From assembly GCA_002269645.1 (NCBI GenBank), contig NIVC01000607.1, forward strand, positions 11,694 through 75,693: DNA of 64,000 nucleotides. Reading direction: 5' to 3'. A program made the translations under genes and the position numbers. The notes beneath the pieces are model-generated. The model searched no databases, had not been told where the DNA came from, and worked only from the letters and a program-made list of their open reading frames with translations. Within the stretch, counting starts at the first letter, position 1, and the number at the start of each line of letters is the position of its first letter. Of this stretch, positions 22,501 through 64,000 are shown one piece after another. The DNA comes from Macrostomum lignano. Lineage: Eukaryota.

Positions 22501-23931
22501 AAATAAGTTCTTGCCTAAAGAGCGCCAACTTGATGTCTAAGGAGCGTCTAAATTGATACCGAAAGAGCGCCAGCATGATGTCTAAGGAGCGTCTAAATTG
22601 ATGCCTAAAGAGCGACAACATGATTTCTAAGGAGCGTCTAAATTGATGCCTAAAGAGCGTCAGCATGATGTCTAAGGAGCGTCTAAATTGATGCCTAAAG
22701 AGCGTCAGCATGATGTCTAAGGAGCGTCTAAATTGATGCCTAAAGAGCGCCAGCATGATGTCTAAGGAGCGTCTAAATTGATGCCTAAAGAGCGCCAACA
22801 TGATTTCTAAGGAGCGTCTAAATTGATGCCTAAAGAGCGTCAGCATGATGTCTAAGGAGCGTCTAAATTGATGCCTAAAGAGCGTCAGCATGATGTCTAA
22901 GGAGCGTCTAAATTGATGCCTAAAGAGCGTCGTCAGCATGATGTCTATGGAGCGCCAACATGATGTCTAAGAAACGTCAACATGATGTCTAACCGAACCT
23001 TTTGATGCACGGCAACCCTCAGGCCGCCAGTCTCCAGGCCCGTGGTGACGATCTCGCTATAGTAGTCGATGCTCTGCTTGACGTCAACACTCGGACTGTA
23101 CAGGATGAGCACGAGGCCTTTCTCAACTCCGCTAGATTTAATCGATCGACTGTCGGCTTTAAACGAGAAACAATTGCCGTAGCCTCTGTGGTAGAAGACG
23201 GTGAAGTTGGCCTCGCTGCAGCGCTCCTGATTGTACTGGCAGTAGATCAGCATGTCGTAGATCCTGGCGCTGGCGGCGCTCATGTTGAACTTTGGCCACG
23301 AGTGCACCGCGTGCTCGAAACTGGCGTAGGCAATTTTGATGGCTTTGACCCGGCCGGCCGACTCCTCTTGCTTCGGATGAGGACCGGACGAATCTGGAGT
23401 GGACGCGAAACCGTAGCCCAGCATGTAGCTGGCTGTGAAATAATCGCTAATCTCGCGCGATTCAGTTCTCAACGAGTCTGAGTTGAGCGTTAGAAACTTT
23501 TTCATCAACGGGTCGCAGAAAGTGACGTCCGGGAAGGTGAACTGGTTGGTGAGCAGTCTGGTGGTGCTGGACACCGGATAGGCTCTGAACAGGCTGATCT
23601 GCTTGTAGGTGTGCAGCGTGAGGCCGGTGACGGCTCCCAGGACTACGCAGCCCCACAGCAGGCGCAGCCACGGCACCTGCTGGGCAAAGAATCTGCCCAG
23701 ACCGTGAGCCGAGGTCCTTCCAGCGAAGCCGTGCAAGTTGGTGTAGAGCATCCGCTGCCGGTGATGATGCCGCAGCTTCCGTTCGCACTCATTTGTTGTC
23801 GAGTCGACGAAGCTGCTTGTGCAGTCGCCTCCATCGCAGCGGAGGCCGAATGACTCCGTCAGCGGGTTCATGGTGGATTTGCGATGGGGTCGGATCGACA
23901 TGGGAGGGTCAGAATCGAGCTTCATATACAC
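13564..23931 (-). CDS. DEG/ENaC (amiloride-sensitive Na+ channel / degenerin family) subunit, channel 1, ~735 aa
   Basis: Exon 23931-22999 has the TSAHG motif, TM1, FPDVTFCD, CQYNQERC, GNCFSF and GLRVAVHQK|. Exon 17850-17696 reads DTIPYPGEYGINSPSG...KRC. Exon 15511-14670 has the thumb CGC, CLNIC, QSRWP and YELVNLFSDLGGIMG|. Exon 13841 to stop 13564 has LWIGVSVVTLCEF (TM2 GxS filter). Phases 0, 2, 1 all match. The 3' end may be spliced to further exons near 12458-12790. Confidence 0.93.
13905..14600. repeat. ~39-43-bp minisatellite in channel-1 intron 3
   Basis: CCCTGCACCCACCTCACGCCTCACCCCAGTATT(CATT)CCTACC units. Confidence 0.9.
15953..16876. repeat. (TAGAG)2TAGAT 15-bp / pentamer satellite
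   Basis: Continuous TAGAGTAGAGTAGAT tract. Confidence 0.95.
17190..17600. repeat. GA-rich low-complexity tracts
   Basis: GGGAGAGAGG-type runs at 17190-17415 and 17535-17600. Confidence 0.85.
17899..18233 (-). mobile_element. tRNA-derived SINE (family 2), full-length copy
   Basis: Minus strand starts GCTGCCGTAGCCCAGTGGTCTGGCGCGGCGC...GGCTCGATTCC (A and B boxes). The body is nearly identical to the copies at 55253-55515 and 60586-60937. Confidence 0.8.
18655..18995. repeat. Adjacent ~21-bp and ~22-bp minisatellites
   Basis: CCAGTTTGTGTAATGGGTTG-type units, then GCGCCATTTTGAGTGTGAGAG-type units. Confidence 0.85.
19449..20652. repeat. Near-perfect 15-bp minisatellite (~80 copies)
   Basis: CGGAACTGAAATACC repeated, with a single 1-nt deletion near 19944. 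Confidence 0.98.
21085..21450. repeat. 23-bp minisatellite
   Basis: TAAAGACAGGTA(G/A)GTTGTCGCCC units. Confidence 0.88.
22510..22995. repeat. 45-bp minisatellite abutting the channel-1 exon 1 donor
   Basis: AGCATGATGTCTAAGGAGCGTCTAAATTGATGCCTAAAGAGCGTC units. Confidence 0.92.
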
Positions 23932-34864: not shown

Positions 34865-43095
<8,231 letters not shown>

Positions 43096-45055
43096 AGTTG
43101 GTTGAGAGCCAAGTTTAGTTAGCTTTCACGGTTGGTAACAAAGATTGAGAAGTATGAATGACTTTTTATGAAGAAAAAAAATGCGTATTTTTCTGCAATA
43201 AAAATAGTTTATTAAGAAATTTAATTTAATTAATTAAAATGCTAAGCTATAAACACACATTAAATTATGTCTAAATTTTATCTACTCACTTTAGTTAGTT
43301 TAAACTCATTATGAAAATAAAAATATAGGGACAAGTATTGAGTAGTCCCTAATAGGATAACTATTTATGAGGTATTTATTTCAGTTTCACTATATAAATA
43401 ATACTGGCAATATTTATATGGACCATGCAAATGATGCTTGTCTTACTTTAAACCAAAAAATGGCCATGGTCTGTGCACTACCCCTAAGTTGTTTTTGCAC
43501 TGTGGACTAGTGATAGACCAAATATGGGTTTTTGCAAGTTTCCAAAACCAAATCCAACTGTACAAAAAATTTTTGAATCTGAATCTGAATATTTGAATAT
43601 GTTTCCAAATGTAAGCAAAAAGTAAAAGGTAAATGACTGGAGTAACTATGACACTTTTAAGGAACAAATTGTTAGCAAACTCCTATCCCGGCTGATGAAA
43701 TCCAATTTCCAGCTTGTAGTGCACATTTTTCTGATGGGTACAACAGTATTATCTTAGCATTTATTTGCTTGCAGTTGTATCATTGGTATTAAGAAAAGAT
43801 GTGCAGCTTGAAAGCTATTGCTTACAAGTAGTATATAGTTTGCAAAGTAAAGAAATTAACAATTGATTAACAAGTTCTAAGCCAATTATCCTAGTCTTGA
43901 CTTCTTTATATTTTTATAGTTTTCTACAATTGTAAGTCTTAATTATTTAAATTTATTTCTTTTTAAACTGGTAAAACTAAGTAGACATGCTTATTTAATT
44001 AGCTTAGACTACTTGTAGAAAATCAGACAACTTTTGCAGCTTTGAAAACTTTAAATATTGTTTAAAACTAGATAAATTTTTATTTCACTTTTATAGGCCT
44101 AAAAGCAAAAATGCTAATTTTGCTATTGAAAAAAGTAGAGAAATGCATTTTTTACAAGTGAGATTTCTAGTTATTCTAATATCTATGGGTGCACTTGAAC
44201 CAATGAGCAATCTTTGGCTCTCTTAGATGGGCTAGGTCTAATTAGCTAAGCTTGTCAATTGTATGCCCCCAAATTATCTCTAGCCTCTATATCTAAATTT
44301 GTTGTCATTAGGTTATTATACACATTTGCATTGGTTAATTAATATTCAAAAGGGAATTGTTAGCCCAAATCTAAGACATTAGTGATTTGGGATAGGCCTA
44401 TATTAGTAATATAGAGGCCTAGCTTATATAAATAAGTTCATAATGAGTACAAAAGGTATATTTTAAGTTTTGTTCTAATAATACATTCAACTAGGGGCTA
44501 TGGCAAGATGAAATTTCAAATTGCTTCCATATAACCCACCTGCTTTGCCTTGCACTTAACTAGTTTATTATATAGAATCACAAGACAATAAATAATGAAT
44601 AGTTCTCTGATTCTTCTTTGATACAAATTAGCCTATTAGGCCTATAAATATAAATCTAAGGGAATTAGGCTAGGGATAGACTGATTGTCTCTAGATGCAA
44701 CCTTTATGCTCAGTTACCAAAGTCAATCTATCTAGCAGAGTAATAGACTAGGTCCAAGAACCTATATAACTTTTGCCAACACATTTTCAGACACATCCTT
44801 TAACACTTTTTTATAACACTCAAAATGTCATATGTTTCTATAAGTATAGGAAAAAGTATCAATACTGTTGGTAGATAGTGTTAGGGCTATATATCAATCT
44901 ATATACTGTATAAGTACAACTAGGCCTACATGATATAATGGGATTGCAAGTTTCATAATTGCAAGTTGTAATTATATTTTGCTAGACCTTATTAATCTGT
45001 TGCTATATATATAATGTACATGTAGGATAGTTTTTTCTTATAATATAAATCAGTG

Positions 45056-47374: not shown

Positions 47375-47997
47375 TATAATTCAAAAAGCTCTCAGTTTGC
47401 TATGCTTGCGCTGGAATCGTCGCAAACTGTCCTTGTGCAATCAGCTGAGCCGTCTGGGGCTCTGCTAGTGACGGCACCTAGCTGCATGATTGAGCGCCTA
47501 GGGCCAACAGTAGTAGAAAGTTCCACCTGTACAAATCACGCGTAGTTAGAGAGAAAACCGTTTTCTGGATATATTGCTGATGTAAAACTACTGTTCGATA
47601 TTTTCAATGCTGCCATCCACCCCATCCGGTTACAGTTGATGGCATATGTTGACAAGCGATCTTCTCACACAGGTATACGCTGCATGTACTGTAAATCTCT
47701 AGGGTGTATTCATGCAGTTGCAAAGTGCAGAGTTCTACATGTATTATACTCTCGTACACATTTGTAAAGCAAGTTTTTATGAGCAAAGAGTGATTTAAAG
47801 CTCATTCGAACTTTGGCCTCATTTGATGACGGTGTGAACGACGAGCCTTTGGTGCTGTTGCGAAAGTGTTTGATTAATTTGTGTTCAATCGAATACTTGA
47901 ATTCGCGGATTATTTGTGGAGCCACCCCTAATCCTTCGATTGTACTTTGTACAAGTATGTACCAGCGTGCATTCGATAGATAGACAGTTAAACACTA

Positions 47998-48956
<959 letters not shown>

Positions 48957-49059
48957 CTAAGACACTAAGACACTAAGACACTAAGACAGACACACTGACT
49001 TGACCATAGCTTTAATTTTATTTGTCCTGTTTTATCCACTGATCTCAATCTGGCCGAGT

Positions 49060-51290
49060 GGCAGACGGAGTTTTGCAAGCTGGATCTCCCGCCCGGTCGG
49101 TTGGTTTTTATCCTTGATGGAATTTCTAGCGGCTTTCGTATCACTAATCGTCGGATGCGTGGCGACGAGCTGGTTGAGGTGGCAAACTACCATGTACTCC
49201 TCGGTTTCTATGCACCAAGAGAGGGTCGCGCGTCAGATTGCTAATGAGCTTCGTCTCGGTCGTTATCGTCTCTACGCTGCTGGTGACAAACCTCGCATTG
49301 TCAGCGTCCTTGGTGCGTTGCCGAAGTCAAATGGTGGCGTTCGCTTAATCCATGACTGCAGCCGGCCGCAAGGGAAGTCTGTCAATTCCGCTAACGAGAG
49401 CGAGCAGAGACTGCGTTTCACCTATGTCCAGAACTTCGCTAAGAGGCTTAAGAAGAATTACTTTATGTGCAAAATCGATCTCAGCGAAGCTTATCGCTCA
49501 TGCGGGATCCATCCTGACGACCACCTACCAGTTTACCGGTTTGAAGTTTCGGTTAGGTGGTGCTGCTCGCGACACCTACATGGTGGACACGCGCCTGCCA
49601 TTTGGTGCGGCTGCTTCCGTCAGAGAGGTCATCTCAGCAAGGCGGTCAGGCTGATGATGGTGCACCGCGGCTTCGTCAATACCGAGGCCTATCTGGACGA
49701 TTTTGCCTTTTGCGGCTCGTAAGACGAGTGCGAAGCCTTCTTCAATGTGTTGACATCAACGCTGATGGCCAAGCTGGGGTTCACTGTGAACTGGGCGAAG
49801 TGTCAGCGGCCTTCGAAGATGATGACGTTCCTCGGTGTGGAGCTCGACACCGTCAAGGGCCTGAAGCGGCTTTCAAACGAAAAAGTGGAGAAGCTTTTAG
49901 AGCAGCTGGACGAGATTGCTGCCAAGGATCGCATCAGCAAGCAAGGTTTACAGCAGATCATCGGCAGGCTGGTGTGGGCTTCGCTGGTGATCGAATGTGG
50001 TCGGCCCTTCTATCAGTACCTGAGTTCGCGCTCTAACAGCTTGACCGTTGGTCAGCAAGATGAGGTATATGCGGCCCTGCGTAGCCAGCTGCGCTGGTGG
50101 AAGTCTGCTCTGTTGGCCCAGAGGTGGAAGACTTTCTGGTTCAATGGCGATTTCGATGCTGCGATTGAGTCGGACGCCTGCCTGGTGGGCGGTGCAGCCG
50201 TGTTGCGGTTGTCGGGTGGCGTGAGTGACTGGGCACTACGTTACTGGGACCTCGACGCGAATGCTTTTTTTGGGACCTGCCAATCAATTACAAGGAGGCC
50301 GTTGCGCCTCTAATGGCGTTGCTTTCGTGGCGGGACCGCCTGCGCAACTGTCGGCTGTGCATCTACTGCGATAATATGGCAGCGGTGCCCTCTGGTGATG
50401 ATGCTGTTGCAGACGGTGGGGCTGCTTTGCATTCGTCAGAACATTCAGCTGTGTGCTTACCACGTGCCAGGGCCGTTTCAAATTTTTGCTGACGCCGCTT
50501 CTCGGCTGCATGAGGGCAGTCAGTTGTTGAATTTTTTGCTGCGCTATCACGGTTCTCTGATGCGTCCCCCTCAGCCGCAGAGCCCGTGAACTACTCGGTT
50601 CCTCCTACGCGGCCCGCTCGAAAAGCGCCATCAGCTCACACGTGCGGTCCTGGCGCGCGTACTGGTCAGCCAAGGGACTCGACCCTGCCGGGTGCACTGT
50701 GTCCGCGCTGCTAAACTACCTGGCTGGCATCACGGGCACGCGTCTGCGAGCCTACAGTAGCATTCGTGGTCACGTCAGCTCGCTTTCAACTGTGGTTTCG
50801 GCAGAACGGCGCACAGGATCTGAAAAAGCACACCAGCATCTGCTGTGGGGCTGCATGCGAGCGCTGGGGCTTCAGGTTAACCAGAAGCTACTGATGTCTC
50901 CGTCTGTGCTGCAAAATCTGTGGTCTATGGTTGACGAGGGCGACAATCGGCAACTGGCCTGCTGGGCGGCCACCATCACGGCCTGGTGGGGAATGCTGCG
51001 AAAATCGTCACTCCTTCGGTCCCAAACTCAGTTGGGTAGTGGGATGAGGGTGCAAGATCTGGCATCTCATCGTGCGGCCTCATCTTGAGCTTGGATTTTG
51101 GCAAGACTATCCAGTTCCGGGATCGGGTGCACCGTGTCCTGCTGCCGAAGTTCCGCGCCTGCCCCGCGCTCTGCCCGGTGGAGGCGATTCGCCGACACCT
51201 GTGCGTCAACAAGCCGCCCTTCTTCCGCCCTAAGTGCTCATTTTTGACGGTGGTATTCCCGCTGGTTTGTTTTTTCCCCTGTGCCTAACT
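49060..51290 (+). mobile_element. Degenerate DIRS/Ngaro-type tyrosine-recombinase retrotransposon (RT, RNase H, YR)
   Basis: RT: VRLIHDCS, KIDLSEAYR, RLPFG, YLDDF, FLGVELD. RNase H: ESDAC, CDN, HVPG...ADAASR. YR: WWGMLRKSSL, KTIQFRDR, LCPVEAI. Several frameshifts and a premature stop at 49720-49722. The YR is C-terminally truncated and no gag or termini were seen. Confidence 0.88.
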
Positions 51291-51725: not shown

Positions 51726-52478
51726 TCAGTTGAATGGCGACACGCACTCGCACAGCCCCGATGTTATCTCGGCATTGGCCTCATAGATATCAACCAGCAT
51801 TTTCGCCCCTAGATAGCGGGCCACAACATTCTCCTTGTCACCTGAATCAGTGGGCTCTCCTTCCGCCCACAGGCTGCCGTTTAGGGTGATGTTGCAGCCG
51901 ACCCAGTGCCAGCCTCCGTCGGGCTCAGCGCTCCCAGCAGGCTGCAAACCTCCGAGATAGAAGCCCTTTCCTGAGCTGCGCAAATCGTAAATCTCGTCCA
52001 CGTGGCTCATCTCGGTGGCGTCTTCCACGTCGGCCATGATCACCAGACCGCTCTCCGACTCGCACTTCTGTCTGCTCACCGACCAGTTTCCGGTGTTGTT
52101 GTACAGCTTGTACTTCACTCCGCACAGGTCGTCTCCGTAGCCAGACGGACACAGCGCGCCCGCCTCGAGTCCTGGCTGCTGCTTCACAAACACCCGGCCT
52201 CTCCTGGAGCAGCCGAAGTCCCTCACCGACTTGCTGCACTTGTCGAACACGAACAGCTGGCACGGACCGTCAGCCAGGCTGAACGCCTGACAGCGCGGGT
52301 TTCGGTTGCACAGAGTGGCGCACCCGATCTCAGAGTGCGAGCCACCTGGAGTCTCAATGAAGTCGCTCCTGATGCACAGGTAGCCGGTGATCAAGTTGTA
52401 GGCGTCCTGCATCGCAGCTGGAGCTTGCAGAGCCAGCAGGACCAGGGCGACTCTCGCTTGGAGTCCGAGCGTCTTCAT
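51726..52478 (-). CDS. Secreted PAN/apple + C-type lectin domain protein, 250 aa, single coding exon
   Basis: ATG at 52478 follows an acceptor-like tctctggtgcccag. Signal peptide MKTLGLQARVALVLLALQAPAA; PAN-like CATLCNRNPRCQAFSLADGPCQL; CTLD with WSVSRQKC, FYLGGLQ, GWHW, WAEGEPTD and a terminal CEC. Confidence 0.85.
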   Translation of the reverse strand: MKTLGLQARVALVLLALQAPAAMQDAYNLITGYLCIRSDFIETPGGSHSEIGCATLCNRNPRCQAFSLADGPCQLFVFDKCSKSVRDFGCSRRGRVFVKQQPGLEAGALCPSGYGDDLCGVKYKLYNNTGNWSVSRQKCESESGLVIMADVEDATEMSHVDEIYDLRSSGKGFYLGGLQPAGSAEPDGGWHWVGCNITLNGSLWAEGEPTDSGDKENVVARYLGAKMLVDIYEANAEITSGLCECVSPFN

Positions 52479-53271
52479 TGCTAGCTGGGCACCAGAGAGA
52501 TTCAGATGAGCTGAGCTGAGTTGCACTGACGTGTTCGAGAGATAGCGGACTGGGGTAAAATTGAGGCCAGTGCTGCATCAGGGATGCTTTTATGCTGCTT
52601 GGCCCGCTGGCTGCGTGAGCTGTCATTGGTTGGGACACAGCATACTGGAGCAGGGTTTGGTTTTATTGTATTTAAATTTGAGGAGGCGACATCCGAATGG
52701 TGAGCTTCTATCTCTGTGTAGAAAGCGAGATGGGGGCTCGTGATTGGCCAGGGCCGTCCTGAGCCCTCACTCTTCCTCAGTTAAGCCTTAACCGTTGAGC
52801 TAGGATCTCTTCAATGGACCCCATCACGGCCACTGTTCAACAAAGCTATTAAACAATAGCTCATATTTAAAAGTGCGTGGTACGCTCGTACTTACCTCCT
52901 ACAATCGAAGCTTGTTGAAAGTTCCCACTTTTAAACCTGGTAATGGTCAACTTTTCTCAGATCTCAGCCAGAAATGACGCAATTCACACCACGTCTTGAG
53001 GTTGTCATCTGAGCCGTGGGTGATGCAAATTGCGTCAAATGGCCCTAGCTAGCTTAGCTGAGGCCGTGGCTAGATAAAGTATAATTGAATCAGTGACGGA
53101 TAAGTGAAAGTGCAAAGAAAAATCCATGGAAACTTTCCTTAAGAGTCTTTGAAACAAACACCTGGTGCCCAGCTGGATGATACAACAAATTCAAAAAGGA
53201 GCTTGCTGAACTGTGCACAGCCACAGAGCTATCGTGGAAGGTCTGAATGCTGTTTTGAATATATACAAGAG

Positions 53272-53975: not shown

Positions 53976-54809
53976 ACGCGTAAGCAACAATCTGAAAATC
54001 ACTGCAAGTTTCCACCACAATGTCAAAGTTTTTCTTATTCGAGAGCTGCAACTTGGATAAATTTTTATTCGGATTTTCTGACGGTTTTCTATAGCTCACG
54101 TATATCTTAGTTTGTTTAACTGGATTGTTTCCAAGAAATTCTATACATATTTGAACATGCGATTTGTAAGCTTTTCTCTGCAGCCTTGAACGCAGAATCA
54201 GCCTGCATACAACATTGTTTTTATCCAGCCCCACGCATAGTCAGTAGATAACAATATATATGTTTGTAAATTAATAGTCGTTAATAGTTCAATAATAGTA
54301 ATAGTAATAGTTTATAGTAAGTTTATATTTAATAGACTAGCAAGAAAACGGGTTAACCAATTGTTACGGGCTAATGTCTGGGTTTGTCTACTGATAAGTA
54401 GAAAGTATGGAGTATGGCGTGAAAATCTTGGTTAGCGGGCAAGAAATTCCGTCATGCGACAGGGCAGAACGTAAGTAAAGGTTCTGTTGGGAGCACGAGA
54501 CTTTCTCGCAGGAAGGATTCCCACAGGAGAGATTCCCTTAGGAGGGATTCCAGCAGGAGGGTTTCCCGCAAGAGGAATTCCCATAGGAGGGATTCCCGCA
54601 GGAGGGTTTCCCACAGAAACATCTTTTGTTTCCTTGCTACGCTCGACTTTCGCATCGATGCTTTGCATTTATCAGAATAAATATCTTAGTAAATGTAACT
54701 ATTGCAAATACAAGCAAAATTGCAAATGAGTAGATCAATAATAATATTAAAATCAATGGTCATGCAGTCACCACTAGGCTGATGCCGTAAAATCGCTTAA
54801 CTCTTGCTG

Positions 54810-57800
54810 CTAAGCGCTCGTCTGCTCCGCTCTCCTATCAAACTGCTGCATCTGTCTCACCCGCAGCCGGTGATGAAGCGCCACTAGGAGGCTGGACAGC
54901 AGTTCAATGAGCTCGCACACGGTCAGAACTGAGACTCCGGACCATAGACCCAAGGCTCCTGCGGTTGTATTGTTATATTAGAAACATGTTAGGCCACTCA
55001 TTTTAAGTTTCTTGTCAAATACACTTCAGTCTACTTTCTATTGGGCATATATAATGCACACGGATTTTTAATTCTATTGAATGCGTGAAAAATGAAGCTG
55101 TTATGCCAGGTTTATCGCTTGTCGCTCCGCCTAATGGCTCTTCAGTGGCTGGCGCGATATACAACGAGTGCAGAGACTGCGGGTGAAGCTTCATTCCGCA
55201 CCACTTTGAAATGACATTAAAACTCTGGTGTCTTTCTTTAGTAAAGGCAGAAGGGTTGCTGTGTGCACCCTGGCGCACTTTAAGCGACATTGTCACGCAA
55301 CCGGCGAGAGGCATTACTGCCCATTCCGCCGACTCCCTGAGCAGGCACACAAGCGCGCGGATACGTACGCAGTCATACGCACAGGCACACACTCACAGGA
55401 GTGTACAGCGGCCCTAACTTTATTTATCGTTAGGCCCTCAAGGGGTTGGCCCTCAAGGCCGTTAATTGCACGAGCAGAGCCAGCCGAGATTCCAATTCAG
55501 CCTCATATTAATGTCAAGGACTACTCAAGTAGAGGGACTGAAAACTACGATTCTTAGAAAAAGTTACGGAGGCGGCTGGTTTTCGCCGAAAAATGCACTA
55601 CGGAGATAGGAAGTTTTCACTTTTTTCATATCAAAATTGTTATTGCTTTCAATAGGAGGCAGACCCAGTGTTCATCTTTTGATATGTTCTGTTTTTCATA
55701 TTGCTCTATCGATATTCATAAAGCTTTTTGTTTAGAAAATTAGCATTCTATGTTAATTTTTCATTCTACATGGCACAGCTCGGCTCTTTGGTTTTATGAA
55801 TCTATTTTATCGATCTCTGTTACACATATTGTTACACAGTCAGCTGAGAATGATAAAATACATTCATAAAACAATGAGCCGGGCCCGGGCCGCTGGTACA
55901 TCAGAGGGCCCCCTGCCCTCGTATTCAGCCAGAGCTGCATTTTGCAAAAGTCTCCGTTGATCCTTGACCGACTCACCGCCCAAGTCAGCCATGAGGTTGG
56001 TGGCTGTATAAGCCGGCTCCTCCGTGATCTCATCTCCGAACTCATCGGAGGCTGACACTGTCAGTTTCAACAGCCGATTCTCCAGCTTCTCCAACAGATC
56101 CGTCAGGTGAGTCACCTGGTCATCTGTTCGCTCTACATCGCTAAGATGAGAGAACCGCTTGGCCCTCAGGTAGACATAGTAGATGCTGGCGATGCCCCTG
56201 GACATCATGTAGTTGTTGGGGAAGGCCCAGTCCTGCAGGTGGCTCACCAGAAACTCCATCGCAGTCTCCGGCCGCAGCTTCGGCCAGGGCGAGGTGGCCA
56301 GCCGGATTTTGTAGCCGCGAACTTCGCACGGAGGCGGGCAGAATCTCCGGGCCTCGAGCTCGTAAGAGTACAGCTGGCGCAGCTGCCTGGAGTGGCACTG
56401 CTCCGTCTGATGCACCTGCTGCGGCTCCGAGGTGTTGAAGCAGCCGGGGTGGCCCGCCAGGTCCGCGGGGATCGGCAGGAAGGAGGGCAGGCAGCCACAG
56501 TTGGCGAAGAAGCGGCGCACTTTGAAGGCGTTGAGGCAGTCCTCCTGCCGGGCTGCCGGGAACTGCAGCGACTGGGAGACCGGGCCTCTGCGGGGGGACA
56601 TGGGGAGTGCTGGGATCTGTGCTGGGATCTGTGCTGGGATCTGTGCTGGGATCTGTGCTGGGATCTGTGCTGGGATCTGTGCTGGGATCTGTGCTGGGAT
56701 CTGTGCTGGGATCTGTGCTGGGATCTGTGCTGGGATCTGTGCTGGTATCTGTGCTGGTATCTGTGCTGGGATCTGTGCTGGGATCTGTGCTGGTATCTGT
56801 GCTGGGATCTGTGCTGGGATCTGTGCTGGGATCTGTGCTGGGATCTGTGCTGGGATCTGTGCTGGGATCTGTGCTGGGATCTGTGCTGGGATCTGTGCTG
56901 GTATCTGTGCTGGTATCTGTGCTGGGATCTGTGCTGGGATCTGTGCTGGTATCTGTGCTGGGATCTGTGCTGGGATCTGTGCTGGGATCTGTGCTGGGAT
57001 CTGTGCTGGGATCTGTACTGGGATCTGTGCTGGGATCTGTGCTGGGATCTGTGCTGGGATCTGTGCTGGGATCTGTGCTGGGATCTGTACTGGGATCTGT
57101 GCTGGGATCTGTGCTGGGATCTGTGCTGGGATCTGTGCTGGGATCTGTACTGGGATCTGTGCTGGGATCTGTGCTGGGATCTGTGCTGGGATCTGTGCTG
57201 GGATCTGGGGCACAGGGATCTGGGGCACAGGGATCTGGGACACAGGGATCTGGGGCACAGGGATCTGGGGCACAGGGATCTGGGGCACAGGGATCTGGGG
57301 CACAGGGATCTGGGGCACAGGGATCTGGGGCACAGGGATCTGGGGCACAGGGATCTGGGGCACAGGGATCTGGGGCACAGGGATCTGGGGCACAGGGATC
57401 TAGGACCTGCACTCCCAGCAACCAGCGAGTGACCACCCAAATCCGGACTGCACCTTGAGCTGCTCAACTTCTCCAGGACTCGTTTCAGTTCCGCAATCTT
57501 GGCTGTCCAATTGGTCGCTGAGAACATTCGGCTGAGGTCGAGGCTCTCGCTGCAGTGTATGAGGTTGCATTTATTGGTACCTTTAACTCGAATTAGCAAT
57601 TGATGACTTGGTAACTTAGTAGCTGAGCTACCCACATTCATCGCTGCACCACTCTCATCTTTGTCACTCTCATCCTTGTCACTCTCATCTTTGTCACTCT
57701 CATCTTTGTCACTCTCATCTTTGTCACTCTCATCTTTGTCACTCTCATCCTTGTCACTCTCATCTTTGTCGCTCTCATCTTTGTCGCTCTCATCTTTGTC

Positions 57801-60800
57801 ACTTGTCACTCTCATCTTTGTCACTCTCATCCTTGTCACTCTCATCTTTGTCGCTCTCATCTTTGTCGCTCTCATCTTTGTCACTTGTCACTCTCATCTT
57901 TGTCACTCTCATCTTTGTCGCCCTCATCTTTGTCACTTGTCACTCTCATCTTTGTCACTCTCATCTTTGTCACTCTCGTCTTTGTCACTCTCTCATCTTT
58001 GTCACTCTCTCATCTTTGTCACTCTCATCTTTGTCACTCTCATCCTTGTCACTCTCATCCTTGTCACTCTCATCCATGTTACTCTCATCTTTGTCACTCG
58101 CCCTGTCACTCGCCCTGTCACTCTTTTCTTGCTTATTCAATGTATCACTCCGGATCGTCACTCTCATACTGACAGTCCATCAAAAATCAGCCTCACTTAA
58201 GCTGCACCCAGGTGTTATTCCAATTCGGCAACAAATAGGTGATCGGCCTCGTTTCGCTGACGCACTCTCGATGTGGCGGTTTTGAGTAGCGAGTAGTCTT
58301 GCTGTAGCGGAGCCGCAGGTCCGTGTGCTGGCCGGGGCTGAGGTTAATGATGTCCGATGGCCAGGGGTACTCAGAACGGGGCACCACCAGCACCTTCGTG
58401 GGTGGTTGTTTTTTTGAGGGCTGGCTTATATGAAGTAATTAGTGGAGCTATTTAGACGCAACTTTATAACAAGATTTACGAATTCATTTTACTAGTCACT
58501 CCATCGTCACTCTACTAGTCACTCCACCATCACTCTACTAGTCACTCCACCATCACTCTACTAGTCACTCCACCATCACTCTACTAGTCACTCCACCATC
58601 ACTCTACTAGTCACTCCACCATCACTCTACTAGTCACTCCACCATCACTCTACTAGTCACTCCACCATCACTCTACTAGTCACTCCACCATCACTCTACT
58701 AGTCACTCCACCATCACACATGCACACAGCCCCATGCCTCTAAAAATAAAAGGTCACTCCATCGTCACTATGCTAGTCACTCCAGCGTCAAAATTTACTA
58801 TTCACTTCACGGTCACTCTCCTATAAGTCACTCGCGCATTCTTACGCGCATGGCGCTGCTGTCGCTGTCAAAGTCGCCTGAGCCCGGTCGCAGGATGCGC
58901 GCCAGCTTGCTGGCGTTGTCGAAGCGCCTGCCGACGGAGTCGGTGGCGTCGGTGAAGAAGCCGACACTCAGGCGGGCCTCGGCAGGTCGCAGCAGCCGCC
59001 ACGGATCCTCGGAGGCCACCGGGCGGAAGCGGTGGCACAGGCCGAGCCGCGGGTGCAGCAGCGTCTGGAAGTCGGCGGCAGAGCAGCGGCGGCCGGCGAA
59101 TCGGCAGCCCGAGAGGCCGGCGGCCACGTCGCTGCCGAACTGCCGCCACAGAAGGCCGCGGCCGGCGCCGGCCGATACGGACTCGGACACCGCGGTCACG
59201 GCGCGGTCTGCGGTACGGCGGAGGCTTTGGGGTGTCAGTGGATGCATTGGGGTGTCAGTGGATGCATTGGGGTGTCAGTGAATGCATTAGGGTGTCAGTG
59301 GATGCATTGGGTGTCAGTGGATGCATTGGAGTGTCAGTGAATGCATTGGGGTGTCAGTGGATGCATTGGAGTGTCAGTGAATGCATTGGGGTGTCAGTGG
59401 ATGCATTGGGGTGTCAGTGGATGTATTCGGGTGTCAGCGAAGGCGTGAAGATGTCTGTAGATGATTTATGAGCAAAGCGACTACATTAAGCCTCTCTGGC
59501 AAGCTCCTGGATGCAAAATTAACGTTGAATAGCAGTCTGTTGCCAGGGACTCACAGCATGGCTTGACGCTGCAAATTCTGAATTGAGCATATCCCCGCCG
59601 ATTGGACTTCGAGAAGCAGGAAGGCACGGCTGAGGCTGATAGAAGACTGCGGCGGCTGTTTTTAAGCAAATACGTCAATTTTAACTACTAGTAGTAGAAA
59701 TAGTAACATTTTTGTTAATTTTTTTTCCAAAAGATTTTCCTTACAAATAAGTTCCATTCTTCCATAGATAATCCACCATGACTTTGGCTTGACGGCAATG
59801 GTTGTGGTTCACCTTCAGCTCGAGATCCGGGGTTTCAACGTGAACTCGAATGACGTCTGCGAAATTCACGTTTGTAAAGTTTGTTTAGTTTCAAGCATGT
59901 CGAAAAGATTTCTAGTAGACAAATTGATCAGGTCAAATTCAAGGATATCATTCAATCTAACTGGGATTTTCGGCCTTCAAAGTCGGCTCCAGCTGGTCCC
60001 AAGCGATGCAGTCGCGTCCCAAGTTGTCGGCGCTCTGACTTCCGGTGTACCGACCGGAGTGGCTCCTGTCTGGCTGGCTGCCGCGACTTGACGAAGGAAC
60101 GCAGTCATAGTTAGGTGACATTGCTGCGGATTTAGTTGCCAGGGTAGCGAAAGAAGTTTTTCAAGGTGAATCACCAAGCTTAAAATGGAATCGAGGCAAT
60201 TGCAGCGGCCCTGACTTTCTCTCATAGGTGAGAATGCACGAGCCAAAATGTGCCCTAGTGGTATCATGTGCCAACAGCCTACGCTCGATTCGGAATACTG
60301 GCTTATAACTACCGAAGTTATATTATTAGACGACTTTTTCTATCAACACTTACAAACTCATTTCACCAGTCACTCCACCGTCACTCTACTAGTCACTCAA
60401 CCGTCACTCTACTAGTCACTCCCAGTCACTTTGCTAGTCACTCCACAGTCTCTCTACTAGTTCACTCTACTAGTCACTCAACCGTCACTCTACTGGTCAC
60501 CTCCAGTCACTTTGCTAGTCACTCCACAGTCACTCTACTAGTCACTCCACCGTCACTCTACTAGTCTCTCGAGCGTCATTTTACGGTAGCCGCAGCCCAG
60601 TGGTCTGGCGCGGCGCTCTGGTGTGCCAGCGGCCCAGGCTCGATTCCCAGTGCAGTCACATTAATTTGGGGCTAAATTGGAATATCGGCTTGGCTCTGCT
60701 CGTGCAATTAACGGCCTTGAGGGCCAACCCCCAAGACGCAGTGAAGTGTACATGCCTAACGATAAATAAAGTTAGGACCGCTGTACACTTCTGCGTGAGT

Positions 60801-62933
60801 GTGTGCCTGTGCGTATGACTGCGTACGTATCCGCGCGCTTGTGTGCCTGCTCAGGGGAAGTCGGCGGAATGGGCAGTAATGCCTCTCGCCGGTTGTGTGA
60901 CAATGTCGCTCAAAGTGCGCCAGGGTGCACACAACCCCTGGAGGAACGAAATTAAGACAATAATGTGCTTATCGTGCTACTCACGACAGTAAGGCACGTT
61001 GCAGTAAGCCGCTGAAAGCTGACCAAGTTCATCATGGTAGAAGCAGTACGGCCCGTCGTTGAAACTGGAAATCGAACTCCGGAACGCCAAGATTAGCGGC
61101 TTTGGTGCTGAAATCAGTGTTAATAACGATTGAGCAGCTCACCTGAATGTCTAACCCTAACATGAAAATGAAAATGAAAATGAAAAAAGAAACTTTCACT
61201 CCACAACTATATAAAATAGAACAGAGTCACATGCGGTAACCTTCACTGCCCCAGATCAAATGCAATCATTTATTTTCTGTGAAAAAAAGATTTTCTCTTA
61301 TCTCCGCAGTGTATTTTTTCCCGGAAATCGGCCGCTTAAAAATTAAACGATTTTTTAGTTCTACCAGGTACGTCCTGTGATACTACAGTGGTCGTTGATC
61401 CTGTGATACTACAGTGGTCCTTGAACCTGTGATACTACAGAGGTCCTTTTGATCCTGTGATACTACAGTGGTCCTTGAACCTGTGATACTACAGTTGTGC
61501 TTTTGATCCTGTGATACTACAGTGGTCCTTGAACCTGTGATACTACAGTGGTCCTTGAACCTGTGATACTACAGTGGTCCTTGATCCTGTGATACTACAG
61601 TGGTTCTTGAACCTGTGATACTACAGTGGTCCTTGAACCTGTGATACTACAGTGGTCCTTTTGATCCTGTGATACTACAGTGGTCCTTTTGATCCTGTGA
61701 TACTACAGTGGTCCTTGAACCTGTGATACTACAGTGGTCCTTGATCCTGTGATACTACAGTGGTTCTTGAACCTGTGATACTACAGTGGTCCTTGAACCT
61801 GTGATACTACAGTGGTCCTTTTGATCCTGTGATACTACAGTGGTCCTTCAACCTGTGATACTACAGTGGTCCTTGAAACTACAATGGTCCTTGAATCACG
61901 TGCGTGGTGTGAACCGCGTCACTTGGGGCTAAGATTTACCTTGGAACATAAGCAAGAGTTTCATTTTATCCATGTGGCCTGGTGGTGAATTGCTTGAATT
62001 GCAAAGCACTCACCTTCATGCCTCATTTGATAGACGCTTAAGTAGCCTCCAACTCCGCCGCACTTTTGCTTATAACCGAAAGGACAAGTTGAGTCGCAAT
62101 GCTCGTCTCCTTGAGGACGGTTCCACAGAAATTTCCTGGTGCAATGGCAACCCCTCGGGCTCAGTCCGATGTAGCTGAAGTTGCTATTGAAGCAGCACTG
62201 GGCGCAGTTGCTGGTCGACCAGCGCATGGCGTAATCAATTCTGTCCGCATTGGTGTCTCACCTGGCTTATAGATTCGTTCGTACATTGAGCCGCATATGG
62301 AGAATGCGGAGCCCACCGTGTCATTGTGGAAACAGCCCCTGTACCTGTGGAATGGATCTGGAAAGATTTGTATAGATTTTACTTTTCTACTCATTATGGT
62401 CACTAGAGAGTCACCACCAGTCACCACACTGAAGGCTCTCACAAGCTGCCACCAGTCACCACACTGAAGGCTCTCACAAGCTGCCACCAGTCACCACACT
62501 GAAGGCTCTCACAAGCTGCCACCACACTGAAGGCTCTCACAAGCTGCCACCACACTGAAGGCTCTCACTCGCTGCCACCACACTGAAGGCTCTCACTCGC
62601 TGCCACCACACTGAAGGCTCTCACAAGCTGCCACCTTCCGCAGGTCAGTCAGCGGCAGTCCTCGCGGCTGTCGGCACCTTCTGTCGTTCTCCGAGAAATT
62701 CATCGCTAGGATGCGGTCAGTGATGGAGCGCCCAGCCTCCCCCAGCGCCCTGGCAGCGCGGTTCCAGCTGATGCACTGCCGGTGCGTGACGTAGGGCCGG
62801 AAGCGGCTCAGGTTCAGGGGCTGCGTGGGTTCCAGAGGCTCAAATAGGATGCCATCTGAGTACACAGGGACTGCGGACTGGTTGCCTGAGTACTCCTCCC
62901 CTGAGTGAGTCGTGCGGCAGAGGCTCGGGTCCG
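54810..62933 (-). CDS. DEG/ENaC channel 2 with kringle, WSC and kringle modules spliced into the ectodomain; 5' end (TM1) expected beyond the right edge
   Basis: Module exons: 62933-62625 (kringle 1, N-half), 62357-62014 (WSC, one internal frameshift), 61107-60985 (kringle 1, C-half), 60123-59962, 59856-59745 and 59655-59555 (kringle 2). Channel exons: 59207-58846 (GCRFAGRRCSAADF...GLCHRF), 58393-58197 (VLVVPRSEYPWP...LSPG), optional 57549-57454, 56587-55977 (NCGC, CPPPC, EEPAYTATNLMADLG) and 54958-54810 (GALGLWSGVSVLTVCEL...*). All junction phases match with GT/AG sites. The channel identity is high confidence; the fusion is inferred from splice phase. Confidence 0.8.
55253..55515 (-). mobile_element. 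SINE family 2, 5'-truncated copy
   Basis: Body matches 17899-18160 and the reverse complement of 60660-60937; the tRNA head is absent. Confidence 0.8.
56608..57400. repeat. 12-bp then 15-bp minisatellites in a channel-2 intron
   Basis: GCTGGGATCTGT units, then GGGATCTGGGGCACA units. Confidence 0.95.
57650..58125. repeat. 15-bp minisatellite
   Basis: TTTGTCACTCTCATC units. Confidence 0.92.
58490..58810. repeat. 23-bp minisatellite
   Basis: ACTCTACTAGTCACTCCACCATC units; a related array lies at 60350-60575. Confidence 0.88.
59225..59440. repeat. 20-bp minisatellite
   Basis: GGGTGTCAGTGGATGCATTG units. Confidence 0.88.
60350..60575. repeat. Degenerate ~23-bp minisatellite related to 58490-58810
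   Basis: GTCACTCTACTAGTCACTC units. Confidence 0.8.
60586..60937 (+). mobile_element. SINE family 2, full-length copy
   Basis: GTAGCCGCAGCCCAGTGGTCTGGCGCGGCGCTCTGGTGTGCCAGCGGCCCAGGCTCGATTCCC head (A/B boxes) plus the shared body. Confidence 0.8.
61375..61890. repeat. ~26-28-bp minisatellite
   Basis: CCTGTGATACTACAGTGGTCCTTGAA units. Confidence 0.9.
62400..62635. repeat. 28/35-bp minisatellite overlapping the kringle-1 exon donor
   Basis: CACCAGTCACCACACTGAAGGCTCTCACAAGCTGC units. Confidence 0.88.
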
Positions 62934-62979
62934 CTGAAACGGTTTGGGGTCAGCTGGGGTCAGCAGGTGATGAGTCCCT

Positions 62980-63637
62980 ACAGCAGACACTAACCAGTAG
63001 CACACAGACACTCACCGGTAGCACAGAGACACTCACCGGTAGCACAGAGACACTCACCGGTAGCACGCAGACACTCACCGGTAGCACAAAGACACTCACT
63101 GGTAGCATGTAGACACTCACCGGTAGCACACAGACACTCACTGGTAGCATGCAGACACTCACCGGTAGCATGCAGACACTCACCGGTAGCACACAGACAC
63201 TCACCGGTAGCACACAGACACTCACCGGTAGCACGCAGACACTCACCGGTAGCACAGAGACACTCACCGGTAGCAACAGACACTCACTGGTAGCACACAG
63301 ACACTCACCGGTAGCATGCAGACACTCACCGGTAGCACGTAGACACTCACTGGTAGCACACAGACACTCACTGGTAGCACACAGACACTCAACGGTAGCA
63401 CACAGACACTCACCGGTAGCACACAGACACTCACCGGTAGCACGCAGACACTCACCGGTAGCACACAGACACTCACCGGTAGCACGCAGACACTCACCGG
63501 TAGCACACAGACACTCACCGGTAGCACGCAGACACTCACCGGTAGCACACAGACACTCACCGGTAGCACAAAGACACTCACCGGTAGCACACAGACACTC
63601 ACCGGTAGCACAGAGACACTCACCGGTAGCACAGAGA
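62980..63637. repeat. 21-bp minisatellite
   Basis: CAGACACTCACCGGTAGCACA units. Confidence 0.93.
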
Positions 63638-64000
63638 CGCAAATTTAATTCAACTGCAAGCCATGTTCACACAGTTTTCTATTGTTGCAATGTGAAGCAG
63701 CTTTCTTGCTTGCACAAAATAAAAAACTGAAAGCAAAAAAGCGATTTCAACAAGATCTTAACTTGATGCTTATCAAAAAATTAATTTGAATCGTCGAATT
63801 TCTATTTTGATTCAAATTGGATAGGCCTGTGAAGATTGCAGGGTATAAATTGATAGAATCAATTAAAAAACTGTTTGATTTCTCGTATAGCATGGCAGAC
63901 TGACTTCAGAAACTACTAAAAAGCCCATAACATGAAGTAGCGAAGTAGCTGTTTAAAATAAAGTGCTGAAAAAAGGAAAAGGAATGCAGTATTTTCTAAA

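What the first reader, a model, noticed from the sequence alone, without database searches (positions are those of the whole stretch)
54810..62933. DEG/ENaC channel with a kringle-WSC-kringle cassette where its finger domain should be
Seen in sequence: the channel exons (54810-59207) begin just before the conserved C-x-F-x-G-x-x-C motif, and no TM1, HG-motif or FPxVTxC exon was found between them and the window edge. The upstream minus-strand exons instead encode two six-Cys kringles (CRTTHSGEEYSGNQS...QCISW...RCRQP...GPYCF...YCNVPYC and DC...YTGSQS...RDCIAW...NHCRQ...PSCF...ICSVKPC) and a WSC domain. The last kringle exon (TGC T|gtgagt, 59555) joins the first channel exon (cgcag|AC, 59207) in frame, and every other junction also matches in phase. 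Established: the region between FPxVTxC and CxFxGxxC is the hypervariable finger domain that controls gating; kringles bind proteins or lysines, and WSC domains are linked to carbohydrate binding. Inference: this is a channel with a built-in receptor module that could be gated by a protein, glycan or matrix tether. I recall module-bearing invertebrate DEG/ENaCs being reported but do not know this arrangement; its novelty needs a database check.
Basis: partly seen in the sequence, partly recalled or inferred. Interest (0 to 1): 0.9.

Follow-up and report, generated by a model that had tools for sequence, protein, structure and literature searches.

The report
Sodium channel with built-in kringle/WSC module
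The region holds the last twelve exons of a flatworm DEG/ENaC sodium-channel gene with about 370 residues of cysteine-rich binding-type domains (kringle-like and WSC) spliced into the finger region that controls gating; the same layout recurs in Macrostomum lignano proteins but I found no paper describing it.

Summary
Twelve minus-strand exons (62933-54810) join through GT..AG sites with matching phases into one 839-codon frame ending at TAG 54812-54810.

- **Channel part:** the last five exons are a clear DEG/ENaC body (Pfam ASC 7.5e-31, CRFAGRRC motif, TM2 with GVS filter).
- **Cassette:** the first seven exons encode a 22-cysteine module. The order is kringle-like 1 (first half), WSC, kringle-like 1 (second half), kringle-like 2. 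The WSC is nested inside the first kringle-like module, not placed between two kringles.
- **One gene, not two:** Macrostomum lignano proteins of 1033-1091 aa align across the whole model (34-38% identity). They carry the HG motif, TM1 and FPDVYxC about 80 residues before the cassette. Intron positions match. The missing TM1 exons therefore lie beyond base 64000.
- **Insertion, not replacement:** the homologues keep about 110 non-cassette finger residues.
- **Distribution:** a profile search of 1.84 billion representatives found the full cassette only in M. lignano. No paper describing it was found.

Caveats: the kringle assignment is below Pfam threshold and has no structural support. The WSC exon needs an odd 44-nt intron or carries a frameshift. 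Function is inferred only; my best guess is a ligand- or matrix-binding module coupled to gating.

The parts
62625..62933 (-). Exon K1a: first half of kringle-like module 1 (Cys1-3; CRTTHSGEEYSGNQS...QCISW...RCRQPRGLPL). Starts in phase 1, so at least one coding exon lies upstream, beyond the window.
   Evidence: Cassette HMM positions 4-97, E 4.4e-30. Aligns to P0001 residues 166-259 at 47% identity.
62285..62357 (-). Exon WSCa: start of the WSC domain (YRGCFHND...SICGS).
   Evidence: Phase-1 acceptor. The donor GTACGA at 62284 is doubtful.
62241..62284 (-). A 44-nt interruption of the WSC coding sequence. It is either a very short intron (GTACGA...ACAG) or a frameshifting insert.
   Evidence: The frame changes here. 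Removing it gives a GC-to-CAxCC spacing of 27 residues, against 26 in P0001. The WSC is a single exon in M. lignano L001 (11594-11896) and L002 (7702-8025).
62014..62240 (-). Exon WSCb: the rest of the WSC domain (NCAQCC...CHC...CDSTC...KCGG...VYQ).
   Evidence: Pfam WSC 27.5 bits for the joined WSC, cut-off 27.8. Cassette HMM positions 127-195, E 3e-14.
60985..61107 (-). Exon K1b: second half of kringle-like module 1 (GPYCFYHDELGQLSAAYCNVPYC; Cys4-6).
   Evidence: 64% identical to P0001 residues 363-404. Matches the Kremen1 and plasminogen kringle C-terminal motif. Phase 1-1.
59962..60123 (-). Exon K2a: kringle-like module 2, Cys1-2 (DC...RYTGSQSADNLGRDCIAW).
   Evidence: The K2 family profile hits tPA kringle 2 at this motif, E 2.8e-4. 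The donor GTTAGA is weak but is the only GT before the in-frame stop.
59745..59856 (-). Exon K2b: kringle-like module 2, Cys3 (ETPDLEL...NHCRQAK).
   Evidence: E 2.8e-7.
59555..59655 (-). Exon K2c: kringle-like module 2, Cys4-6 (VPSCF...RICSVKPC). The donor TGCT|gtgagt is in phase 1.
58846..59207 (-). Channel exon 1: about 33 residues of post-cassette finger, then CRFAGRRC (59109-59086), then the beta-ball motif LGLCHRF.
   Evidence: The alignment to P0001 and P0002 runs without a break across the 59555|59207 junction.
58197..58393 (-). Channel exon 2 (VLVVPRSEYPW...PGQHTDLRLRY...HRECVSE).
   Evidence: 44% identity to P0001 residues 670-732.
57454..57549 (-). Channel exon 3 (short helical linker).
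   Evidence: Phase 2-2. Its position matches the P0001 exon for residues 740-771.
55977..56587 (-). Channel exon 4: Cys-rich thumb and palm (DCLNAF...CGCLPSFLPIP...FCPPPCE...SPWP...EEPAYTATNLMADLGG).
   Evidence: tblastn E 3e-47 to P0001. Part of the best Pfam ASC stretch.
54810..54958 (-). Channel exon 5: TM2 (ALGLWSGVSVLTVCELIELL, about 54956-54870, GVS at the selectivity-filter position), a short C-terminus and stop TAG 54812-54810.

Best explanation
What it is: the 3' twelve exons of a DEG/ENaC channel-subunit gene from a Macrostomum-type flatworm genome. It belongs to a lineage-restricted, multi-copy subfamily.

In this subfamily a module of about 370 residues and 22 cysteines has been inserted into the extracellular finger. 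It sits between the FPxVTxC strand and the CxFxGxxC motif. The module consists of a kringle-derived unit split between its 3rd and 4th Cys by a WSC domain, followed by a second kringle-derived unit.

Each unit is bounded by phase-1 introns. That is the usual signature of exon shuffling into a phase-1 intron.

The N-terminus (HG motif, TM1, first palm strand, first part of the finger) is encoded upstream of base 64000.

How it most likely works (inferred, not shown): the subunit forms a trimeric Na+ channel. Its finger carries an outward-facing binding module for a glycan, a protein or the matrix. Occupancy of, or pull on, that module shifts the finger against the thumb and so changes gating. 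The finger-inserted GRIP domain does this in ENaC, and finger-region ligand sites are thought to do it in peptide-gated relatives.

The stated confidence is for the identity and architecture. For the gating role I would give about 0.35.
For: - **Gene model:** one open frame through 12 GT..AG exons.
- **Channel identity:** Pfam ASC 7.5e-31. The CRFAGRRC, LGLCHRF, thumb cysteines, ADLGG and GVS-TM2 motifs are all present.
- **Same architecture elsewhere:** colinear alignment over 99% of the model to M. lignano P0001 (38% identity, E 2e-184), and to P0157, P0151 and P0002. All have HG, TM1 and FPDVYxC before the cassette. Pfam reads them as ASC-WSC-ASC.
- **Gene structure:** exon boundaries coincide with HSP boundaries in L001 and L002.
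- **Constraint on the cassette:** 21 of 22 cassette Cys are invariant in five full-length paralogues. Cassette identity (27-42%) is close to channel identity (32-52%).
- **WSC:** the family profile matches Wsc1 at 4e-10 and Kremen1 at 6e-10. Foldseek matches Wsc1 at TM 0.62.
- **Kringle-like K2:** 52 of 53 PDB hits are kringles, best 2.8e-4, with the three motifs in order.
- **Kringle-like K1:** K1 with the WSC removed aligns to K2 by hhalign at 86.7% probability, E 4e-6.
- **Exon phases:** all cassette units are 1-1.
- **Extracellular location:** six N-glycosylation sequons.
- **Precedents:** the ENaC GRIP domain lies between finger helices alpha1 and alpha2 and controls gating (PMC6197857). 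ENaC N-glycans are reported as matrix tethers (PMC7958617). C. elegans EGAS proteins combine EGF and ASC domains (PMC10424705).
Against: - The N-terminal exons are not in the window, so TM1 is inferred from homologues only.
- No transcript evidence was available for this locus.
- The WSC exon needs a 44-nt intron with weak signals that M. lignano paralogues lack, or else carries a frameshift.
- Kringle scores are below Pfam's cut-off (18 and 12 bits against 34.3).
- The AlphaFold cassette model (pLDDT 65) gave no kringle match.
- The full-length model failed (pLDDT 42), so the position of the cassette on the channel is not modelled.
- Nothing here tests binding or gating.
Confidence: 0.8

Rival explanations
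1. Anchoring or assembly module without a gating role. The cassette only fixes the channel to a particular extracellular matrix or cell-surface partner, or directs subunit assembly or trafficking. Gating would be set elsewhere, for example as a constitutive leak or by pH.
For: WSC and kringle domains in Kremen1 form a rigid protein-binding platform (PMC5014086). The cassette is conserved to about the same degree as the channel body, which fits any essential role and not specifically gating.
Against: The insertion is in the finger, the region where ENaC places its gating-control GRIP domain (PMC6197857). A pure anchor could sit at a terminus or a peripheral loop.
Confidence: 0.25
2. This copy is a recently disabled pseudogene, or carries an assembly indel. 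The WSC exon has a frameshift at 62284-62241, and the rest merely still looks intact.
For: The WSC is one uninterrupted exon in two M. lignano paralogues. The proposed 44-nt intron has a weak donor, no pyrimidine tract, and is shorter than the introns of about 70 nt or more seen in L002. The window's WSC scores only 27.5 bits, against 39-41 in the paralogues. No identical or close protein is in the databases.
Against: All nine downstream exons (about 1.9 kb of coding sequence) remain open, keep every conserved Cys, and keep the channel motifs. Removing the 44 nt restores the family's Cys spacing.
Confidence: 0.12
3. The two six-Cys modules are not kringles. They are a lineage-specific disulfide-rich fold that shares only short motifs with kringles.
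For: Pfam Kringle is below threshold in every member. K1 with the WSC removed reaches only E 0.8 against the PDB. AlphaFold predicts helices in K1a and long strands in K2, and Foldseek finds no kringle. Both modules are 50-70 residues longer than a kringle.
Against: The K2 profile's PDB hits are almost all kringles, with the three motifs in the right order. The six Cys are colinear. UniProt names a paralogue fragment (P0158) 'Kringle domain-containing protein'. Seven of eight family members give Pfam Kringle hits, best 1.3e-4. The AlphaFold model is weak exactly in these parts.
Confidence: 0.3
4. Protease-released auto-inhibitory plug. As with the ENaC GRIP domain, the cassette holds the channel shut until an extracellular protease cuts it out.
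For: It lies in the same general region as the ENaC GRIP domain (PMC6197857). Kringles are typical of protease-system proteins (established knowledge).
Against: I noticed no conserved dibasic or furin-type site flanking the cassette when reading the alignment, though I ran no systematic scan. The one RxxR in the window (RAAR) is not conserved in the paralogues. A 22-Cys module cross-linked by disulfides is a poor candidate for release.
Confidence: 0.08
5. Two neighbouring genes joined by mistake: a secreted kringle/WSC protein gene followed by a 5'-truncated channel gene.
For: Phase-1 to phase-1 joins are common among shuffled modules, so a phase match alone has about a 1 in 3 chance. No transcript data exist for this locus.
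Against: The same fusion, with TM1 in front, occurs in at least four divergent M. lignano genes and in entries from more than one source (NCBI PAA accessions and UniProt-only A0A1I8 accessions). The alignment is continuous across the junction. The intron 59554-59208 is only 347 nt and mostly minisatellite. A channel starting at 59207 would have no TM1 and no start codon context.
Confidence: 0.04

Closest known systems
Uncharacterised Macrostomum lignano proteins: PAA82974.1 (BOX15_Mlig007204g1, UniProt A0A267GC91 'WSC domain-containing protein'), PAA47210.1, PAA86857.1, A0A1I8IV52
   Same: Same architecture from end to end (cassette, then channel). They share the same 22-Cys skeleton and the same intron positions.
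   Different: Only 34-38% identical to the window's protein. Their WSC is a single exon. They are complete, with HG motif and TM1, whereas the window copy is cut off at its 5' end. None has a described function.
Classical DEG/ENaC channels (ASIC, ENaC, FaNaC, MEC-4). The nearest solved structures by sequence are FaNaC 7yvb and 8on7.
   Same: ASC family body: CxFxGxxC, beta-ball, Cys-rich thumb, and TM2 with a GxS filter.
   Different: Their finger is about 60-100 residues long. Here it carries about 370 extra residues of imported domains.
[quoted passage not shown]
   Same: An extra domain inserted within the finger that controls gating (PMC6197857).
   Different: GRIP is a small beta-sheet between alpha1 and alpha2 and is not a shuffled module. 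It acts through proteolytic removal of inhibitory tracts. There is no sequence relation.
[quoted passage not shown]
   Same: DEG/ENaC subunits that carry an imported extracellular module type (PMC10424705).
   Different: The module is EGF rather than kringle or WSC. The position of the EGF domains was not checked here. No currents were obtained from them in oocytes in that study.
Kremen1/2 ectodomain (Kringle-WSC-CUB)
   Same: The only well-known pairing of a kringle with a WSC domain. The Kremen1 WSC and kringle C-terminus both match the cassette profile, and Foldseek gives probability 0.95.
   Different: In Kremen the domains follow one another and are followed by a CUB domain and a TM anchor. 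Here the WSC is nested inside the kringle-like unit, there is no CUB, a second kringle-like unit follows, and the whole is embedded in a channel.
Yeast Wsc1 cell-wall stress sensor (WSC domain, PDB 7pz2)
   Same: Best sequence match (E 4e-10) and best fold match (TM 0.62) for the WSC part. Its WSC domain is described as a mechanosensor head (PMC9024836).
   Different: It is a single-pass fungal sensor, not a channel. The family's WSC has two extra conserved Cys.

Membership tests
DEG/ENaC (Pfam ASC, PF00858) | Match to the ASC profile above the gathering score | tested here: met
   108.1 bits against a cut-off of 23.6, E 7.5e-31.
DEG/ENaC (Pfam ASC, PF00858) | Conserved ectodomain motifs: CxFxGxxC, the beta-ball G-x-C-x-x-F, the Cys-rich thumb, and the pre-TM2 DxGG | tested here: met
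   CRFAGRRC, LGLCHRF, eight thumb-region Cys and ADLGG are present and aligned with the homologues.
DEG/ENaC (Pfam ASC, PF00858) | TM2 with a G/S-x-S selectivity filter | tested here: met
   LWSGVSVLTVCELIELL, with GVS at the position of the ASIC GAS.
DEG/ENaC (Pfam ASC, PF00858) | N-terminal HG motif, TM1 and the FPxVTxC strand | not testable with these tools
   Absent from 59208-64000. Exon K1a starts in phase 1, so upstream exons exist outside the window. All three features are present in all full-length M. lignano homologues.
DEG/ENaC (Pfam ASC, PF00858) | Forms an amiloride-sensitive trimeric Na+ channel | not testable with these tools
   Needs expression and electrophysiology.
Kringle (PF00051) | Match to the Kringle profile above the gathering score (34.3 bits) | tested here: not met
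   K2 scores 18.1 bits (E 0.0035) and K1 scores 12.1 bits (E 0.25). The best score in the family is E 1.3e-4, still below the cut-off.
Kringle (PF00051) | Six conserved Cys with the motifs YxG...CxxW, NxCRxP and PxC...CxxxxC in order | tested here: met
   Both modules have six invariant Cys and the motifs in order. For the K2 profile, 52 of 53 PDB hits are kringles, best E 2.8e-4. K1 is weaker: E 0.8 against the PDB, but hhalign to K2 gives 86.7% probability.
Kringle (PF00051) | Kringle fold with 1-6, 2-4, 3-5 disulfides | tested here: inconclusive
   The AlphaFold cassette model has pLDDT 65 and is below 50 over parts of both modules. Foldseek finds no kringle.
WSC (PF01822) | Match to the WSC profile above the gathering score (27.8 bits) | tested here: inconclusive
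   The window copy scores 27.5 bits, just under the cut-off and dependent on the 44-nt intron model. The paralogues score 39-41 bits. The family profile matches Wsc1 and Kremen1 at 4-6e-10.
WSC (PF01822) | WSC fold | tested here: met
   Tested on the M. lignano homologue, not the window protein. Foldseek matches 7pz2 (Wsc1) at E 8e-4, TM 0.62 normalised to the target.
Kremen | Kringle-WSC-CUB ectodomain on a single-pass anchor | tested here: not met
   No CUB match in Pfam. The WSC is nested rather than sequential, and the host is a two-TM channel.

The most novel reading that the evidence does not exclude
These are DEG/ENaC channels with an intrinsic receptor or tether. The kringle-like/WSC module binds a matrix glycan or a secreted protein, and force or ligand occupancy on it is passed through the finger to open the pore. 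That would be the first member of the family in which the long-postulated extracellular tether or macromolecular ligand site is part of the channel polypeptide. The paralogue expansion in Macrostomum would then represent diversified specificities.
Probability: 0.25. Interest if true: 0.85.

Novelty: new variant of a known kind. Interest (0 to 1): 0.62.

Why it matters
How extracellular matrix, force or large ligands reach the gate of DEG/ENaC channels is an old open question, raised by the tether models for MEC-4 and ENaC.

Here the candidate binding module is fused to the gating-control region itself. Delete-and-swap experiments in oocytes, and RNAi in Macrostomum (an established laboratory flatworm), could test the idea directly.

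It is also a clean example of exon shuffling into an ion-channel ectodomain, including one module (WSC) shuffled into the middle of another (kringle-like).

One large DEG/ENaC survey that sampled M. lignano dropped all sequences longer than 1000 aa (PMC9234716). That filter would have removed these proteins, and may explain why the architecture has gone unremarked.

Tried and rejected
The profile search and both structure predictions therefore used M. lignano homologues instead.
- **AlphaFold on full-length P0001** with a 14-sequence alignment gave pLDDT 42 and pTM 0.31. It is unusable, so the placement of the cassette relative to finger helices alpha1-alpha3 rests on sequence only.
- **AlphaFold on the cassette** gave pLDDT 65. 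Foldseek confirmed the WSC but no kringle.
- **K1 profile with the WSC removed** against PDB sequences reached only E 0.8.
- **Exact threading of P0001 onto L001** failed because the locus encodes a 98%-identical allele. I used HSP boundaries instead.
- **Other ways to splice the WSC:** the strong donor at 62261 (phase 1) has no in-frame phase-1 acceptor in WSCb. It could only skip WSCb altogether (reasoned).
- **Species identification:**
  - Searches with two other window genes gave no hit or only a 51% match to an unnamed protein.
  - Complex minisatellites are shared with M. lignano contigs at 89-93% identity.
  - I conclude Macrostomum or a close relative, but the species is not settled.
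- **Literature:** searches for kringle or WSC together with ENaC, degenerin or amiloride, and for the M. lignano gene identifiers, found nothing relevant.
- **Other checks:** no tRNA genes were found in the window. No long ungapped inverted repeats were found in 54500-64000.

Full report
**1. What is in the sequence**

Reading 54500-64000 on the minus strand and translating all frames shows a row of G+C-rich open segments. They are separated by A+T-rich or minisatellite-filled spacers, which is a eukaryotic exon-intron pattern.

I fixed each boundary by anchor strings and joined twelve exons. Every acceptor is AG and every donor is GT. The phases agree throughout, and the product is one open frame of 839 codons ending at TAG 54812-54810.

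The first exon (62933-62625) begins in phase 1, so the gene continues upstream. The 1067 bases left in the window hold a 21-bp minisatellite (62984-63638) and A+T-rich DNA with no coding signal.

**2. The channel part**

Pfam gives ASC at 108 bits, E 7.5e-31. The five 3' exons carry these features:
- CRFAGRRC (59109-59086) and the beta-ball motif LGLCHRF;
- the Cys-rich thumb;
- ADLGG, then a TM2 reading LWSGVSVLTVCELIELL, with GVS where ASICs have GAS.

The nearest solved relatives of the homologue P0001 are the FMRFamide-gated channels 7yvb and 8on7, followed by ASIC5 and ENaC subunits.

**3. The cassette**

The seven 5' exons encode 369 residues with 22 cysteines and six N-glycosylation sequons.

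The middle part is a WSC domain.
- In the window copy it scores 27.5 bits, against Pfam's cut-off of 27.8.
- It is clear in the paralogues (39-41 bits).
- The family profile matches yeast Wsc1 at 4e-10 and Kremen1 at 6e-10.
- A model of the homologue's cassette matches the Wsc1 structure (TM 0.62).

Each has six invariant Cys and the kringle motifs in the right order, but both are 50-70 residues too long and fall below Pfam's threshold.

Evidence for a kringle origin:
- A profile of module 2 finds kringles in 52 of 53 PDB hits (tPA kringle 2, HGF, ROR1/2, uPA, prothrombin, plasminogen, apo(a)). The best E-value is 2.8e-4.
- UniProt labels a paralogue fragment 'Kringle domain-containing protein'.
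- Module 1 with the WSC cut out aligns to module 2 by profile-profile comparison (probability 86.7%, E 4e-6).

Evidence against:
- Module 1 alone is not significant against the PDB (E 0.8).
- The AlphaFold model (pLDDT 65, weak exactly in these parts) gave no kringle match.

I therefore call them kringle-like. The acidic NPDGD stretch that follows CR in classical kringles reads QPRGLP and QAKVM here. I recall that stretch as part of the lysine-binding pocket, so lysine binding should not be assumed.

The WSC is not between two kringles. It is nested inside the first one, between Cys3 (RCRQP) and Cys4 (GPYCF). The order is K1a-WSC-K1b-K2. Module 2 also has its longest extra loop at that same place.

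**4. One gene or two**

A search of 5.8 billion proteins with the spliced model returned Macrostomum lignano proteins that align over 99% of it: P0001 (1052 aa, 38% identity, E 2e-184) and P0002.

A profile search of the cassette against 1.84 billion representatives found the whole cassette in only nine clusters, all from M. lignano. The other roughly 1100 hits match the WSC part alone.

The full-length members are P0001/P0162, P0157 (1091 aa), P0151 (1033 aa) and P0002. In all of them the chain runs HG motif, TM1, FPDVYxC, about 80 residues, cassette, about 30 residues, CxFxGxxC, and then the rest of the channel. Pfam reads them as ASC-WSC-ASC.

The entries come from more than one source: NCBI PAA accessions and UniProt-only A0A1I8 accessions.

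On the M. lignano loci L001 and L002, the tblastn segment boundaries fall at the same alignment positions as the window's exon boundaries. This includes the cassette-to-channel junction.

The intron at that junction in the window is only 347 nt and mostly a 20-bp minisatellite. A channel that started at 59207 would have no TM1.

A family N-terminal HMM run against the six-frame translation finds nothing between 59208 and 64000.

So this is one gene, truncated by the window edge.

**5. Insertion, not replacement**

In P0001, 496 residues separate the FPDVYFC cysteine from the CTFGEHLC cysteine. About 385 of these are cassette and about 110 are not.

The conventional DEG/ENaC gene that also lies in this window has 91 residues in the same interval. 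Its first exon is 23868-22960 and scores Pfam ASC 5e-27.

The stretch just after the cassette (G..LLa.qFgsd...gl.gC.F) resembles the helix that precedes CxFxGxxC in other family members. The finger therefore seems to be kept, with the cassette hanging from one of its loops.

I could not confirm this in three dimensions because the full-length model failed (pLDDT 42).

**6. Origin**

Exons K1a (309 nt), WSC (73 + 227 = 300 nt), K1b (123 nt), K2a (162 nt) and K2b+K2c (112 + 101 = 213 nt) each start and end in phase 1.

That is the pattern expected of modules moved by exon shuffling into phase-1 introns (established knowledge). It explains both the cassette in the channel and the WSC inside the kringle-like unit.

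**7. Constraint**

Among five full-length paralogues, 21 of 22 cassette Cys are invariant. Pairwise identity in the cassette is 27-42%, only slightly below that of the channel body at 32-52%. The module is therefore maintained by selection as strongly as the channel itself.

**8. The weak spot**

The WSC coding sequence changes frame at 62284-62241. Removing these 44 nt as an intron (GTACGA...ACAG) restores the frame. It also gives a Cys spacing of 27 residues, against 26 in P0001.

However, the splice signals are poor. The shortest introns seen in the M. lignano paralogues are about 70 nt, and their WSC is a single exon.

The alternatives are an assembly indel or a very recent disabling frameshift. 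All nine downstream exons are still intact.

**9. Source organism**

Complex minisatellites in the window match M. lignano contigs:
- the 28-bp unit at 53-517 matches at about 89%;
- the array at 47975-49000 matches at about 92-93%.

Yet no window-encoded protein has a close database match. The best reading is Macrostomum, possibly M. lignano itself in a region whose genes are not in the deposited protein sets, or else a close relative.

**10. How it may work**

The architecture is shown; the following is inferred.

The finger is where ENaC carries its GRIP domain, which controls gating (PMC6197857). ENaC N-glycans have been proposed as tethers to the matrix (PMC7958617). The WSC domain is the head of a yeast mechanosensor (PMC9024836). 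In Kremen1 it forms, together with a kringle, a rigid protein-binding platform (PMC5014086).

The most economical reading is a binding module on the gating lever. A glycan, protein or matrix partner would hold or pull the finger and shift the open-closed balance. I put this at about 0.35.

A purely anchoring or assembly role comes next (about 0.25). A protease-released plug is less likely (about 0.08).

**11. Novelty**

The sequences are public but uncharacterised.
- No paper in the searchable library links kringle or WSC domains with DEG/ENaC channels, and none mentions these gene identifiers.
- A large survey that sampled M. lignano discarded sequences over 1000 aa (PMC9234716), which would have removed them.
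- Module-bearing relatives do exist: C. elegans EGAS proteins combine EGF and ASC domains (PMC10424705).

This is therefore a new variant of a known kind, not a new kind.

Noticed in passing
window 13567-23868, minus strand: A second, conventional DEG/ENaC gene. Exon 23868-22960 runs from the start Met through the HG motif, TM1, FPDVTFC, an ordinary finger of about 90 residues, and CQYNQERC (Pfam ASC 5e-27). A large exon lies within 15543-14665, and the TM2 exon starts near 13851. It has no cassette, and no database protein matched its first exon.
   Followed up: partly
window 62984-63638, 62422-62635, 61374-61877, 60367-60565, 59227-59437, 58490-58717, 57650-58099, 56607-57401: Almost every intron of the gene holds a minisatellite. 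The 21-bp unit just upstream of exon K1a reads CGGTGAGTG on the sense strand, a consensus 5' splice site repeated about 31 times. The donor used by exon K1a (62624) is itself the first unit of a 28-bp array whose units each contain GTGAGA.
   Followed up: no
window 62241-62284: A 44-nt interruption of the WSC exon that is absent from two M. lignano paralogues. It is either an unusually short intron with weak signals or a frameshift or assembly error.
   Followed up: partly
window 51729-52577, minus strand: A long open segment with a PAN/apple-like Cys pattern, followed by what reads as a C-type lectin domain (…WHWVGCNITLNGSLWAEGEPTD…). It lies just downstream of the channel gene. This was judged by eye only.
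   Followed up: no
window 48985-51085, plus strand: Overlapping long open frames that look like a retroelement (a reverse-transcriptase-like stretch, then a possible recombinase-like stretch). A 1-kb satellite (47975-49000) lies immediately upstream and matches M. lignano contig NIVC01004536.1 at 92-93%.
   Followed up: no
window 38078-43125, minus strand: Exons of a HEAT-repeat protein. The only database match is 51% identity to an unnamed protein from a Logan assembly (P0166).
   Followed up: partly
window 60589-60924, 17899-18230, 55260-55514, 2785-2960: A dispersed element of about 340 bp (93%, 89% and 74% identical copies, two of them inverted). Two copies sit in introns of the cassette gene. 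One end looks tRNA-like by eye, but ARAGORN calls no tRNA.
   Followed up: partly
L002 3094-4363 and 7962-9580: On the M. lignano locus of P0157, weaker second tblastn hits (30-45% identity) cover the N-terminus, K1a and the channel exons and are interleaved with the true exons. This suggests remnants of, or overlap with, another paralogue on the same contig.
   Followed up: no
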